From contig NW_026782177.1 in the NCBI RefSeq assembly GCF_031769215.1, forward strand, positions 682,001 to 746,000: 64,000 nucleotides of DNA, read 5' to 3'. Below, one piece after another: positions 34,961 through 59,701 of the stretch (position 1 is the first letter of the stretch; every line of letters begins with the position of its first letter). Source of the DNA: Ylistrum balloti (lineage: Eukaryota). A model generated the notes under the pieces. The model was not told the origin of the DNA. It was given only the letters and a program-made list of their open reading frames with translations, and searched no databases. The translations under genes were made by a program, and so were the position numbers.

Positions 34961-37900
34961 TTAAATCTGTACATAGGTCATTTTGTTTCCTCGCTGTTTG
35001 TTTACAACTGCATAACAAGGAGCTTCCTGGCCGGATGTTGTGGTATCTGCTTCGTTAGATTGAAGACTACTTCCGGTTGAACGTTTGTCGCCGAGCACAG
35101 CCGATGCGCTGCTTTCTGAAAAACTGATATCTGAATTTGTTGTGTTGTCAAACAGAGGGTTATCACATGTATTGGTGTGATAAGGTACAGAGTCCAATCG
35201 GGTGTTTTCAGCCGAGTACGACTGGTCCTCCAAGCTAGACTGGTCGTAAGTAATAATCTCCTTCATATCCTCCTTGTCGCTGTTGTGACTGGCATGGGTG
35301 AACGGTAACTTTGGTGGTGTAAAACGATTGTATTCTGGGTTAGAGAAGGATTTAGGTGACAAGGAAGTGGATCTCCTATTACTGAAATGGAAGAAAAGTT
35401 TGGTACAAATATATTGGTTACGAAACTCCCTCCTCCACCTTAGAAAGAGTACATTTCACCACAGAGATACATCTGGAAAATTAAATTGTTATCGGTGGGG
35501 AAAACTGGACAACCCTGCTTCCTAGTCAAATATATATTAGTATATAAGAATGATACAGCTAGAGTTAACATTAAAACATTCATCCTTAATTAGTAAATAC
35601 GCACGCCTTCATTTGTTCTATATAAAACAAAAAGAACACAGAAAAAACTTTCAGTGACTGTTTTAGGACTGGTGCTCAATTGATATTATTATTATTTTTT
35701 TTTCAAATTAATTGTAAAAATAAGTTGAAATTCATTCACTATCTTCTACTATGTCGTTTGAGAAATACTTGCTTTAAAGGATATGGTAACGTGTGTAATC
35801 TGGAGAAGAGTCCTAATACTTAACATCGACGACTCATAGTTCTAAAGAAGAAGTGATGACTTCTGATCTTACCTCCGACAATGTACTACGATGACAAGCA
35901 CCAGAACAAAGAGTACGAATGCCCCTACTATCGTCGGGATGATGATGTTTACTGAAAAGGATATATCTCATATATTACAATGTCGATAATAATTATATAG
36001 GACATAAAATACATGACGATTGTATAAAAAAGAAGATGTTCACACACAGACAGGTCATCTTTCCTTTGATGTTTCCGGAGACATAACTATGGTAACCTAT
36101 AAACAAAAGAAGATGCTTACAAACAGTTCTTATAAGTTCTTTGTTAAAAAAAGCAAAAATGGGTGAACATTTAAATTGCTGGATGTTGAAAAAGTAAACA
36201 CTTAAACATAATTTTGGAAATTATGTCAATAAAACACAGATTATCTAGTTCTGAGGAAAATAACCGACGCGAGATACGCTGCACACAATGTAAAGTGACG
36301 CCACAAAAGTATTGCAACAAACATGACCGATTTTCTGCAAAAAATAGATTGGTACATTTCATTTGCGATTTTTGGACAGAAACAATTTGACCTTCGGCAT
36401 GAAACTCGTCAAGAACAAATTTAAGGGGGTATATTTTTACTTGACACCGGAATTTTGTGACGTCATGTTGTATTTACATTAGACGCGGAAGTAGCAGACG
36501 ATGGCTGGAAGTGCCAATGAACGAGTCGGACGAATTTTAAAGAAAATTGAAACAACGGAGATGTAGAAATTCGCCATCGAAGTGGTAGACCAAAACTTTT
36601 GAGTGACCGTGGTTTTCGCAGATTATATCGGCATGTTAGAAAAAAGGTGAGACGGACTTTCAGATATTACAAACACTTTAAATTCCTCGTCCTGTCTATA
36701 CAAGAACTGTTCATAGCATTTTACACCGGGAAGGTATAAAAAAAACCCCGCCGAATTCGAAAGTCCATCACAATTTCAGAGGTCAACCGTCAAAGACGAG
36801 TTCAGCGGTGTAGAGGAAAACTAGCGTGGACTGAGCACAGGTGGCAAAAAGTTCTGTTTACGGACGAAACACAAGTTGTTATTAGTAAGAAAAATATTTT
36901 ACATGTATGGAGAAAATCAACAGAAACGTGGAACCCGGAGTGTTTAAATATATTGAAAGCGCCCCACTGGATGAGTGTAATGTTTTGGGGATGTATTTCA
37001 TATAATGGTGTTGGTACTTTGGTTGATGGAAATATAAATTCACAAATGTATATAGATTTACTGGACGAAAACTTGTGGCCTGTTGTTGCAAAAGAATTTG
37101 GCAATGATGATTGGATTGATCAGGATGATAATGCGACCCCTCATCGTTCTAGTGTGACCAATGCCTGGAAAACAGCAAATTGTATACCAAGTATGGATTG
37201 GCCTTCAAATCCCCAGATATAAACATTACTGAAAATGTGTAGAGATGTATAAAATTAAACCGAATAAAAAAAAATCGGATGACATTGCAAACAGGGATCA
37301 ACTTATCACAGCAGTGAAAGATATCTGGCGACGTCTACCTCAGGTCTACATAACATGTTTATATGCATCAATTCCCAGATGGATTCGCAGTGTCATCACC
37401 CAGAAAGGTTATATAACAAAATATTAAAAGTTTGGTAAGTATTATACATTTTTGATATGAAAAATATTGTTTGAAATTTCAACTTTGTTTTGCAATTGTG
37501 AATGACGTTGGCCATGTTTGTTGCGATACTTTTGTCACGTCACTGTACAACTGTCGGTTCGAAACTTACGGGTGTCGTGGCTGGTATCAATCCCTTCCTC
37601 GTTGTTTCCATCTGACTTCGTACCGGAAGTAGAAAAAGGCGACGAGGCAGGCACTGTATTATTTAAAGGCTGTGGTGTGGTAGACGTTTGTGTGTTAGAT
37701 TGAGTTGTTGTAGGTATAGGCGTGGTAGATTGAGTTGTTGTAGGTTTAGTTGTGGTAGATTGAGTTGTGGGTTTAGGCGTGGTAGATTGAGTTGTAGGTT
37801 TAGGCGTGGTAGATTGAGTTGTAGGTTTAGGCGTGGTAGATTGAGTTGTAGGTTTAGGCGTGGTAGATTGAGTTGTAGGTTTAGGCGTGGTAGATTGAGT

Positions 37901-59200: not shown

Positions 59201-59701
59201 GGAATGTGACTCGACAAATATCTGACAGGTGTGGCTTAGTTTTGTTTCTTATTGTATTATTCTCAAAATCACCAGAACAAGAAGTAAAGCAGAGGAAATA
59301 AAACCGCCCCTGTCACACGAGTGTTTACAGGAACTAATTAAGTATTACACCGGCCACTGTGATCACACAGTCATCAAAGCGTTATACATATATGTAGTAT
59401 ACTAATATCATAATAGCAAAACAATTTCATTTCAAATAAAAATCTACTTTTAATACAAAATTTTAATCATATTAAATAAAAAAAAAAAAAAACATTGCGT
59501 CAAAATCTTTCTAAAACTAAAAACACGACGTCAGATAAATATATATAGCAAAACCAGGCCCATGTTAGCAGCGAAATTGGTAGATAATAGTGCACACTAG
59601 AACATCACTAGAGCATTAAGAAGTGTTTGTTGTATAACCTCAAAGATCTTACCTTGCAAGAGCGTTAGAGAGAGAATAAGAAGTTGGTGCAGTGACGCCA
59701 T
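50203..59701 (-). CDS. Receptor B: tandem paralog of receptor A; domain-exon donor missing in this assembly (possible truncated/secreted allele, pseudogene or misassembly)
   Basis: Exons (minus): 59701-59653 (MASLHQLLILSLTLLQ), 58150-58100 (TANTDCQLLGGIYGYP), 56957-~56630 (domain; runs to TAA at 56622-56620), 54821-54153 (mucin), 52749-52671 (TM, 79 nt like A), 50770-50203 (tail ...PLYAVVDKTSPARHVTHLKI*). All eight ectodomain Cys are conserved with A. Confidence 0.78.
51125..51682. repeat. 38-bp minisatellite (caggcatcaggtgagtgcagcctttcagtcaaacatgt), ~14 copies
   Basis: Period 51162 to 51200; intronic in receptor B. Confidence 0.95.
53033..54108. repeat. ~58-62-bp minisatellite (acagaatacacagatcgtacacaaaaaggactgacactacacacatatatatagacagac)
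   Basis: About 18 copies with variable CA/TA tracts; begins ~45 nt into the intron after the mucin exon of B. Confidence 0.95.
54153..54821 (-). CDS. Mucin-like stalk exon of receptor B (TTTTTPKP repeats, 223 codons)
   Basis: atttcag|AT GAT ACG TCA...AAC T|GTGAGT, phase 1-1; its start DTSSTISVTC is homologous to DNLSSTINATC of A. Confidence 0.86.
56620..56957 (-). CDS. Cys-rich CUB-like domain exon of receptor B, ending in a stop instead of a splice donor
   Basis: ttttcttcag|TT TCT CAG ATG TGT acceptor; ends RYCLSFYLIF* whereas A ends RYCLSLTL G|GTAAGT. Confidence 0.82.
57101..58099. repeat. 46/52-bp minisatellite (accaccgaggagtggactagatacggtatacttactacctgtataa), ~20 copies, derived from an exon/donor junction
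   Basis: Minus-strand unit CTCCTCGGTGGTTTATACAGGTA-GTAAGTATACCGTATCTA matches the adjacent exon end CTTCTCGGTGGTATATACGGGTACCCTG|GTAAGTATACCATATCTA. Confidence 0.93.
58495..58875. repeat. Four copies of an 89/97-bp repeat (gataaagaggtattcgtcatataccacgtgataa...)
   Basis: Unit starts at 58502, 58591, 58688 and 58777. Confidence 0.9.

What the first reader, a model, noticed from the sequence alone, without database searches (positions are those of the whole stretch)
34961..59701. Undescribed-looking tandem family of CUB-like/mucin/Tyr-tail receptors
Two genes share exon order, intron phases (1,1,1,1,2), a 79-nt TM exon, a short Cys-bearing second exon (DC.LLG.I.GYP), eight conserved ectodomain Cys, and the motifs GRSVLIDMY, GDVITV.LNR and SRYCLS. 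Their stalks and tails have diverged except for YAVV[N/D]K. The layout (a binding domain raised on an O-glycosylated stalk, with SH2-type YxxV/I motifs and no catalytic domain) parallels vertebrate inhibitory/paired immune receptors and scavenger receptors. I do not recognise a named family, and the CUB-like label is an inference from size, the beta-rich pattern and phase 1-1 exon symmetry.
Basis: partly seen in the sequence, partly recalled or inferred. Interest (0 to 1): 0.75.

Follow-up and report, generated by a model that had tools for sequence, protein, structure and literature searches.

The report
Mollusc CUB-like mucin-stalk receptor family
Two neighbouring scallop genes belong to an unnamed, mollusc-wide family of cell-surface proteins (a CUB-like head on a sugar-coated stalk, with conserved tyrosine motifs inside the cell), and one of the two carries a 14-base insertion in this assembly that cuts the protein short.

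Summary
Both genes lie on the minus strand of a Ylistrum balloti (scallop) contig.

- **Gene 1:** six coding exons that match RefSeq XP_060071652.1 ("mucin-2-like", 573 aa) exon by exon, with phases 1,1,1,1,2 and a 79-nt TM exon.
- **Gene 2:** the same layout, but exon 3 in this assembly carries a 14-nt insertion. It shifts the frame and gives TAA before any in-phase donor. The only public run that holds the locus lacks the insertion and reads an intact junction.

The head has no Pfam or PDB sequence match. A profile search finds 98 representative relatives. All the named ones are molluscs (scallops, oysters, mussels; a freshwater mussel and an abalone weakly), and their names are "uncharacterised" or automatic misnomers. 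The Ylistrum genome has at least 19 head exons in five clusters.

A confident AlphaFold model (pLDDT 92) is a jelly-roll beta-sandwich. CUB domains are the commonest top matches (Z 8-9) but tie with PPC and GOLD domains. Sequence homology to CUB is not significant.

Head, stalk, TM and tail occur together across the family. The tail motif YAVV[ND]K is conserved from scallop to oyster and mussel.

The function is inferred: most likely a ligand-binding receptor that signals through tyrosine motifs. No RNA data exist for this species.

The parts
43320..43377 (-). Gene 1 exon 1 (coding part): start codon and signal peptide, ends in phase 1
   Evidence: Sequence read; agrees with the N-terminus of P0003
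39116..39169 (-). Gene 1 exon 2, 54 nt, phase 1-1, carries the first Cys (DCKLLGDIEGYP)
   Evidence: its translation is a substring of P0003 from residue 21
38478..38813 (-). Gene 1 exon 3, 336 nt, phase 1-1: the CUB-like beta-sandwich head with six core Cys
   Evidence: AlphaFold model with pLDDT 92.4; fold matches
37570..38343 (-). Gene 1 exon 4, 774 nt: eighth Cys, then the Thr/Pro/Ser stalk made of about 20.7 copies of a 27/30-nt repeat
   Evidence: T+S+P reaches 0.83 in a 60-aa window
35873..35951 (-). Gene 1 exon 5, 79 nt: transmembrane helix (IIIP.V.G.F... motif), ends in phase 2
34961..35381 (-). Gene 1 exon 6: 139-aa cytoplasmic tail with FSNPEY, YAVVNK and a C-terminal TYVQI, plus the stop codon
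59653..59701 (-). Gene 2 exon 1, 49 nt: start codon and signal peptide (MASLHQLLILSLTLLQ), phase 1
   Evidence: matches the N-terminus of the Mizuhopecten orthologue P0007
58100..58150 (-). Gene 2 exon 2, 51 nt, phase 1-1 (DCQLLGGIYGYP)
56605..56957 (-). Gene 2 exon 3 (head domain). In this assembly it is 23 nt longer than in run X1 and stops at TAA 56622-56620. The ancestral donor is A|GT at 56605|56604.
   Evidence: 55% identical to P0007
56622..56635 (-). 14-nt insertion (CTATTTGATTTTCT on the minus strand) that shifts the frame. It copies the acceptor tract 340 nt upstream (56962-56983) and is absent from run X1.
   Evidence: Repeat family D7; 'left out 14' at 56622
54153..54821 (-). Gene 2 exon 4, 669 nt: eighth Cys plus the Thr/Pro stalk
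52671..52749 (-). Gene 2 exon 5, 79 nt: transmembrane helix
   Evidence: 76% identical to P0007 residues 372-396
50203..50770 (-). Gene 2 exon 6: 188-aa tail with MKENVLYDNS, YAVVDK and a C-terminal HLKI, plus the stop codon
   Evidence: 48% identical to the P0007 tail

Best explanation
The two genes are members of a mollusc-restricted, tandemly expanded family of type I membrane glycoproteins.

Shown by the sequence and models:
- A signal peptide leads into a head of about 120 residues. The head is a jelly-roll beta-sandwich with six near-invariant Cys, plus a flanking pair in these two genes. It is most like a very divergent CUB domain.
- A Thr/Pro/Ser tandem-repeat stalk follows, then a conserved TM helix encoded by a 79-nt exon.
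- The tail has 140-190 residues and no catalytic domain. It keeps a few islands: E.P.YAVV[ND]K, M.E...Y[DN].S, FSNPEY in gene 1, and a hydrophobic-x-hydrophobic C-terminus.

Inferred mechanism: the O-glycosylated stalk holds the head above the glycocalyx, where it binds an extracellular ligand. Tail tyrosines are then phosphorylated and dock SH2/PTB adaptors, so the protein works as a non-catalytic signalling receptor.

Gene 1 is intact. Gene 2 in this assembly carries a 14-nt frameshifting insertion, which most likely makes it a null allele. At best it would give a 145-aa secreted head. An intact allele exists in the one public run that holds the locus.
For: - **Gene models:**. Gene 1 equals RefSeq XP_060071652.1.
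- **Family:** the profile search gives 98 representatives at E<=1e-3, 40 of them at <=1e-10. Named members come from Ylistrum, Mizuhopecten, Pecten, Argopecten, Saccostrea, Crassostrea, Mytilus, Potamilus and Haliotis. The own genome has at least 19 head exons in five clusters.
- **Conserved neighbourhood:** the Mizuhopecten orthologues carry consecutive accessions OWF54800-54802 on one contig.
- **Layout:** an N-terminal head, a PTS-rich stretch and one TM helix occur in most relatives of 250 aa or more.
- **Transcripts:** intron-free 2.2-kb and 1.6-kb contigs carry the whole 557-aa and 411-aa ORFs, and those products show head, PTS stretch, TM and tail.
- **Fold:** pLDDT 92.4 and pTM 0.87. 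CUB domains give Z 7.4-8.8 over 100-116 residues; aSFP reaches 24% identity. CUB clusters top the language-model search. The four CUB Cys and the terminal Tyr align in register with the family's.
- **Tail motifs:** Y[AS][VQE]V[NDQE]K occurs in 12 of 32 tails against 0 expected. Yxx[VIL] occurs 60 times against 31.9 +/- 4.9. NPxY occurs 6 times against 0.9. See also the alignment.
- **Gene 2 lesion and intact allele:**
Against: - There is no RNA run for this species, so splicing here rests on the RefSeq model and on relatives.
- No ligand, tissue or phosphorylation data exist.
- CUB homology is not significant by sequence: Pfam gives no hit, and hhalign gives probability <1% with E 0.1-0.3.
- The fold matches tie with PPC and GOLD domains, and they sit at Z values the tool itself calls middling.
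- The motif enrichment counts related proteins, so the counts are not independent.
- YxxV and NPxY are also clathrin sorting signals.
- Across Ylistrum and Mizuhopecten the head is better conserved than the tail (71% vs 46% in gene 1). That is not the pattern of a fast-evolving immune recognition head.
Confidence: 0.55

Rival explanations
1. Endocytic or scavenger (cargo) receptor. The head captures a ligand. The tail motifs (FxNPxY in gene 1, YxxPhi such as YAVV) serve as clathrin-adaptor sorting signals for AP-2 mu2 or Dab2/ARH/GULP-type PTB proteins, not as phosphotyrosine signalling sites.
For: FSNPEY lies about 18 residues after the TM helix in gene 1 and its orthologue. NPxY is found in 6 of 32 tails against 0.9 expected. 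Every tail has at least one Yxx[VIL]. The NPxY-plus-YxxL pairing recalls the CED-1/Draper/MEGF10 engulfment receptors (my own knowledge).
Against: Gene 2 has no NPxY. The conserved island spans about 9 residues (E.P.YAVV[ND]K), which is more than a sorting signal needs. Paralogues carry arrays of 3-4 ITIM/ITSM-like motifs near the C-terminus, and that looks like an immunoreceptor tail.
Confidence: 0.2
2. Membrane-tethered mucin. The main job is that of the glycosylated stalk (barrier, lubrication, anti-adhesion, or presenting glycans to lectins). The head is only a folded cap and the tail anchors to the cortex through its C-terminal hydrophobic-x-hydrophobic PDZ-type ending.
For: The stalks have 220-260 residues and up to 0.83-0.92 T+S+P, and are built from tandem repeats. 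The C-termini VQI / LKI / IQI / LQI / LKV are conserved in the orthologues of genes 1 and 2. Annotators name these proteins mucin-like.
Against: The head is the best-conserved part and defines the family. Stalk length and sequence vary freely, and the stalk is absent from the RefSeq model of the neighbouring third gene (P0005). Six Cys and Asp35 are near-invariant in 81 sequences.
Confidence: 0.12
3. Inhibitory member of a paired immune-receptor system. Tail tyrosines would act as ITIMs that recruit SHP/SHIP-type phosphatases, with activating counterparts elsewhere in the family.
For: Paralogues have canonical ITIM/ITSM-like strings such as LVYAEL and VIYSEV. ITIM-pattern matches number 19 against 8.1 +/- 2.7 in shuffles. 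The family forms tandem arrays of at least 19 genes and shows a polymorphic null allele. Oyster ITIM receptors that recruit SHIP2 are reported for an NCAM1 homologue (PMC11841013, abstract only).
Against: The window's own motifs do not fit [SIVL]xYxx[IVL]: PCYAVV, PLYAVV and MTYVQI have P, P and M at -2. No short-tailed member with a charged TM helix was seen among the full-length relatives; one abalone protein has a 30-aa tail but was not examined further. There is no expression or challenge data.
Confidence: 0.13

Closest known systems
CUB domain (Pfam PF00431; spermadhesins, C1r/C1s/MASP, Kremen, neuropilin, PCPE-1)
   Same: Size of about 110 residues and a jelly-roll beta-sandwich. Z is 7.4-8.8 with rmsd about 3 A over 100-116 residues. 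Four Cys and the C-terminal Tyr fall in the CUB register, with Cys spacings of 25 and 18 residues. The head is encoded by a phase 1-1 exon.
   Different: No significant sequence match by Pfam, hmmsearch or hhalign. It has an extra conserved disulfide pair (CxC ... YC). CUB's conserved Asp/Glu calcium-site residues are missing; the family's own invariant acidic residue is Asp35. PPC and GOLD domains score as well as CUB.
CDCP1 and DCBLD2/ESDN (vertebrate CUB-containing type I proteins with Tyr-phosphorylated tails)
   Same: CUB-type ectodomain, a single TM helix, and a non-catalytic tail whose tyrosines dock SH2 proteins (my own knowledge). One family member touches the CDCP1 CUB model at E 0.021.
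   Different: No detectable homology. Those proteins have several domains and no mucin stalk, and their tail motifs (YxxP and others) differ.
CED-1 / Draper / MEGF10 engulfment receptors
   Same: Non-catalytic type I receptors that combine NPxY with YxxL/V motifs in the tail (my own knowledge). Gene 1 has FSNPEY plus YAVV.
   Different: Their ectodomain is EMI plus EGF repeats, not a CUB-like head on a mucin stalk. Gene 2 lacks NPxY.
Cell-surface sialomucins (CD34/podocalyxin, CD43, PSGL-1, MUC1)
   Same: PTS tandem-repeat region, a single TM helix, a short signalling tail and a PDZ-type C-terminus in the CD34 family (my own knowledge).
   Different: Here a conserved Cys-rich beta-sandwich sits at the membrane-distal tip and defines the family. 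There is no homology.

Membership tests
CUB domain (PF00431) | Sequence match to the CUB profile above the curated cut-off | tested here: not met
   No CUB hit for the window exons or for full-length relatives. None of 81 family heads hits PF00431 at E<=1, and only one touches CUB_CDCP1_1 at 0.021. Against 7 true CUB domains of this genome, hhalign gives probability 0.6% and E 0.1. The best hmmsearch E-values are 0.03-0.07 in tiny databases.
CUB domain (PF00431) | Beta-sandwich (jelly-roll) fold of about 110 residues | tested here: met
   The model has pLDDT 92.4. CUB chains score Z 7.4-8.8 and make up about half of the top 36 rows. The match is not unique: PPC scores 8.5-8.7 and GOLD 7.8-8.1. 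Foldseek finds no hit at E<=1e-3.
CUB domain (PF00431) | Four conserved Cys forming C1-C2 and C3-C4 disulfides | tested here: inconclusive
   Family Cys22, Cys47, Cys76 and Cys94 align with CUB C1-C4 in the global hhalign alignment and are invariant.
CUB domain (PF00431) | Acidic calcium-site residues (a subset of CUB domains) | tested here: not met
   The invariant Asp of the genome's own CUB domains (Asp57 in A3) aligns to the family's 'CGS' Ser or a gap. The family's invariant acidic residue is Asp35, which lies elsewhere.
ITIM-bearing inhibitory receptors | [SIVL]xYxx[IVL] in the cytoplasmic tail | tested here: not met
   The window genes have PCYAVV, MTYVQI and PLYAVV, with P or M at -2. 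The pattern is met in paralogues such as P0008, P0021, P0068 and P0063.
ITIM-bearing inhibitory receptors | Tyr phosphorylation and recruitment of SHP/SHIP phosphatases | not testable with these tools
   Needs biochemistry.
Membrane-tethered mucins | Long Pro/Thr/Ser tandem-repeat region next to a TM anchor | tested here: met
   The gene 1 stalk has about 20.7 copies of a 27/30-nt unit, and the gene 2 stalk has 12/30-nt units. T+S+P reaches 0.83. O-glycosylation itself was not tested.
Tyrosine-based sorting-signal receptors (YxxPhi / FxNPxY) | YxxPhi or NPxY in the tail | tested here: met
   Gene 1 has FSNPEY and YAVV; gene 2 has YAVV. Adaptor binding was not tested.

The most novel reading that the evidence does not exclude
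This is a mollusc-wide family of immunoreceptor-like proteins built on a cryptic CUB head instead of an Ig or lectin domain. It is tandemly expanded and polymorphic for null alleles, and its tails carry ITIM/ITSM/ITAM-like tyrosine arrays. It would be an independent invention of the inhibitory or paired receptor logic of vertebrate leukocytes.
Probability: 0.2. Interest if true: 0.75.

Novelty: new variant of a known kind. Interest (0 to 1): 0.45.

Why it matters
Bivalves have very large innate-immune and adhesion gene repertoires, and most of their receptor families are known only through recognisable domains. This family has none that standard libraries see, so annotation pipelines give it misleading names such as mucin-2-like, endochitinase A-like and filamentous hemagglutinin.

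Defining the family gives a handle for re-annotation across molluscs. The definition is a six-Cys CUB-like head, a stalk, an IIIP.V.G TM helix and a YAVV[ND]K tail.

It also gives a short, testable list:
- what the head binds;
- whether the conserved tyrosine is phosphorylated;
- whether the gene 2 null allele segregates with any trait in a fished scallop.

Tried and rejected
- **Pfam scans** of all window exons, ten full-length relatives and 81 heads gave nothing above cut-off. The only matches were sub-threshold low-complexity/TM hits such as TMEM154.
- **PDB sequence search** with the family profile gave only chance hits at E>=0.5.
- **Word-index search with the head profile** sees only short proteins and found two. 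The same search with the full-length orthologue P0007 was swamped by mucin low complexity. It showed no Ylistrum product for gene 2, which is weak evidence only.
- **Exact look-up of P0003's contig** was withheld.
- **RNA evidence:** the single run listed is DNA-like, because its contigs cover introns. Expression and splicing in Ylistrum could not be tested.
- **First AlphaFold run** on 9 paralogues (pLDDT 77.5) was replaced by the 81-sequence run.
- **Flanking Cys pair:** a co-occurrence test was uninformative because the alignment ends are unreliable.
- **Exon 1 of gene 1:** my own guess (42886-42838) was wrong. The RefSeq protein places it at 43377-43320.
- **Transposase-like ORF** in intron 4 of gene 1 (36953-37427, plus strand) gave no Pfam hit.
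- **Literature searches** by topic, LOC numbers, UniProt/GenBank accessions and SRA runs found nothing on the family.
- **Joined models:** I built no spliced model. Gene 1 was handled through the database protein P0003 and by single exons, and gene 2 exon by exon only.
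Full report
**What is in the sequence**

Both genes lie on the minus strand. The two head exons are 45% identical over 109 residues (E 2e-30).

Reading the DNA gives gene 1 as six coding exons:

| Exon | Coordinates | Content |
|---|---|---|
| 1 | 43377-43320 | start codon, signal peptide |
| 2 | 39169-39116 | 54 nt, first Cys |
| 3 | 38813-38478 | 336 nt, head |
| 4 | 38343-37570 | 774 nt, stalk |
| 5 | 35951-35873 | 79 nt, TM |
| 6 | 35381-34961 | tail and stop |

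All borders are AG/GT and the phases are 1,1,1,1,2. Each of exons 2-6, translated alone, is an exact substring of the database protein P0003, and exon 1 agrees with its N-terminus. P0003 is RefSeq XP_060071652.1, "mucin-2-like", of Ylistrum balloti, 573 aa. This names the genome: a scallop, 648.5 Mb in 1372 contigs, with the window at C320:682001-746000.

Gene 2 has the same plan: 59701-59653, 58150-58100, 56957 onward, 54821-54153, 52749-52671 (again 79 nt) and 50770-50203.

**Gene 2 is broken in this assembly**

After SRYCLS, the gene 2 head exon reads FYLIF and then TAA (56622-56620). The only phase-1 GT lies 4 nt beyond that stop, counting from the end of the TAA. A 22-nt direct repeat flanks the exon: 56622-56643 and 56962-56983, 340 nt apart (family D7). 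The downstream copy is a duplicate of the polypyrimidine tract in front of the exon's own acceptor.

The only public run that holds the locus is X1. It is DNA-like, since its contigs cover introns, and it differs by about 0.4% in single letters. It lacks exactly 14 nt at 56622-56635 and a further 9 nt at 56607-56616. Without them the exon ends SLTL plus one base before GTATTA. That is phase 1 and the same ending as in gene 1 and in the Mizuhopecten orthologue P0007.

All other gene 2 exons are open and similar to P0007: head 55%, TM 76%, tail 48%. So the reference haplotype carries a recent frameshifting insertion. It predicts a 145-aa product without stalk, TM or tail, and an mRNA with a premature stop upstream of three junctions. 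An intact allele exists.

I cannot tell whether X1 is the reference animal's other haplotype or another animal. An assembly error is not excluded, though a templated 14-nt copy is not a typical one. The word search with P0007 found Mizuhopecten and Pecten orthologues but no Ylistrum product for gene 2. That is weak evidence, because only 8000 candidates were scored.

**The family**

Pfam sees nothing in any exon. A profile of nine paralogous head exons from this genome (A1) found 98 representatives at E<=1e-3 among 1.84 billion proteins, 40 of them at E<=1e-10.

The named relatives are all molluscs:
- scallops: Ylistrum, Mizuhopecten, Pecten, Argopecten;
- oysters: Saccostrea echinata and S. 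cucullata, Crassostrea gigas, C. angulata and C. virginica;
- mussels: Mytilus trossulus and M. californianus;
- weakly, Potamilus (a freshwater mussel) and Haliotis (an abalone).

Their names are "uncharacterized" or automatic misnomers: endochitinase A-like, filamentous hemagglutinin, cell wall integrity and stress response component 1-like, mucin-5AC-like. One UniRef entry is called "CUB domain-containing protein", a label I could not reproduce with Pfam.

Most relatives of 250 aa or more have the head at about residues 35-155, a PTS-rich stretch and one TM helix. Two contigs from sequencing-run assemblies (2195 nt and 1592 nt) carry uninterrupted 557-aa and 411-aa ORFs. The two products show head, PTS stretch, TM and tail, so those parts are joined in mRNA at least in relatives.

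With the 81-sequence profile, the Ylistrum genome shows at least 19 head exons: six on C320 (720, 738, 753, 885, 914 and 926 kb), six on C105, four on C39, two on C248 and one on C100. The Mizuhopecten orthologues of gene 2, gene 1 and the next gene carry consecutive accessions OWF54800-54802 on one contig. The local trio therefore predates the split of the two scallops.

**The head domain**

AlphaFold on P0003:21-161 with 81 family sequences gives pLDDT 92.4 and pTM 0.87. The model is all-beta apart from two short helices.

| Search | Result |
|---|---|
| Foldseek against the PDB | no hit at E<=1e-3; best TM 0.46/0.55 to a spermadhesin CUB |
| Exhaustive aligner, CUB chains | Kremen Z 8.8; aSFP 8.7 (106 residues, 24% identity); MASP-2 8.2; C1s CUB2 8.1; MASP-1 7.9; also neuropilin, PCPE-1, TSG-6, Neto2, enteropeptidase, Gpr126 |
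| Exhaustive aligner, other folds | PPC / collagen-binding domains 8.5-8.7; GOLD domains 7.8-8.1 |
| Language-model neighbours | nearly all CUB clusters, at scores 0.82-0.86, which is lead level only |

The aligner's own guidance is that Z around 8 may reflect only a common arrangement.

Sequence tests for CUB fail. Against seven true CUB domains of this genome (A3), hhalign gives probability 0.6% and E 0.1. Profile-to-sequence searches in either direction give no E-value below 0.03, even in tiny databases.

Yet the global alignment puts family Cys22, Cys47, Cys76 and Cys94 on CUB C1-C4, and Tyr123 on the CUB terminal Tyr. Within the family, Cys22/47/49/76/94 and Asp35 are 99-100% conserved, Cys124 is 96% conserved, and Tyr123, Pro72 and the Gly-Ser after Cys76 are about 85% conserved.

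My reading is a jelly-roll head that is probably (about two in three) a very divergent CUB relative. It has one extra core disulfide and lacks the CUB calcium-site residues. Membership is not shown.

**Stalk, TM and tail**

- **Stalk:** the gene 1 stalk is about 20.7 copies of a 27/30-nt unit at 89% match. The gene 2 stalk is a looser 12/30-nt array. O-glycosylation is inferred from composition.
- **TM helix:** the motif IIIP.V.G.F.L.VL is shared by the three neighbouring paralogue groups.
- **Tails:** overall similarity is weak (best BLASTP E 9e-4), but conserved islands remain. These are M.E...Y[DN].S, an invariant Tyr, E.P.YAVV[ND]K, and C-termini VQI / LKI / IQI / LQI / LKV in the orthologues of genes 1 and 2.
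- **Motif counts in 32 family tails:** Y[AS][VQE]V[NDQE]K occurs in 12 tails (0 expected from shuffles). Yxx[VIL] occurs 60 times against 31.9 +/- 4.9. The ITIM pattern occurs 19 times against 8.1 +/- 2.7. NPxY occurs 6 times against 0.9.

These proteins are related, so the counts are not independent. The motif does recur in oyster (IPKYAVVNK) and mussel (DGLYAVVDK) tails that are otherwise unalignable. Some paralogues carry arrays such as GDLYAQV, GDVYAVV, GLVYAEL and TVIYSEV.

The window's own motifs have Pro or Met at -2, so they are not canonical ITIMs. Gene 1 also has FSNPEY about 18 residues after the TM helix.

**Mechanism**

- **Shown:** the gene structure, the family, the layout and the conserved residues.
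- **Inferred:** the proteins sit at the cell surface, the stalk is glycosylated, the head binds a ligand, and the tail Tyr motifs dock SH2/PTB proteins.

I prefer signalling over pure sorting for two reasons. The conserved island is about nine residues long, and paralogues stack several such motifs. The endocytic reading and the tethered-mucin reading both remain open. The strict inhibitory or paired-receptor reading is possible but lacks its defining features in these two genes.

**Limits**

- There are no RNA data for this species.
- The N runs at 26881-27371 and 34466-34596 were left as they are.
- Nothing in the window looked human.
- No literature on the family was found.

Noticed in passing
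window 57101-58081 (also 56489-56592): Intron 2 of gene 2 is filled by a 46-nt minisatellite of about 13+4 tidy copies (up to 24 by looser matching). Its unit resembles the 3' end of exon 2 plus the donor (CTCGGTGG...AGGTAgtaagtatacc). Each unit therefore carries a donor-like site. Two degenerate copies also lie just after exon 3.
   Followed up: partly
window 56411-56587 and 57097: The contig of run X1 also skips 177 nt of intron 3 (56411-56587). It places a 94-nt piece (56414-56507) upstream of exon 3. The region around the gene 2 head exon is therefore structurally polymorphic, or mis-assembled in one of the two sources.
   Followed up: no
G000:C320:753076-753447 (+), locus L003, about 7 kb beyond the window end: A third family gene faces gene 2. 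It is P0005 = XP_060071629.1, orthologue of Mizuhopecten OWF54802. Its RefSeq model has no mucin stalk, with the head running straight into the TM helix. The conserved Tyr of the tail motif is Asp (LDAVVNK), whereas Mizuhopecten has LYAVVNK.
   Followed up: partly
window 39215-39912, 44125-45779, 47210-48657, 51125-51588, 53033-53977, 58458-58873: The introns and the spacer between the two genes are packed with long minisatellites with units of 26, 29, 32, 39, 45, 38, 60 and 89-97 nt and 4-27 copies each. They create most of the long spurious ORFs in this stretch.
   Followed up: no
window 36953-37427 (+): Two ORFs in intron 4 of gene 1, on the opposite strand, look like a decayed DDE transposase to me (from memory). 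Pfam gave no hit at E<=0.1, so this stays unconfirmed.
   Followed up: partly
window 34961-34990 and 50203-50232 (-): The orthologues of genes 1 and 2 all end in hydrophobic-x-hydrophobic (VQI, LKI, IQI, LQI, LKV). This looks like a class II PDZ-binding C-terminus.
   Followed up: no
window 34466-34596: An N run lies about 365 nt downstream of the gene 1 stop codon, so the 3' UTR and polyadenylation region of gene 1 may be incomplete. It was left untouched.
   Followed up: no
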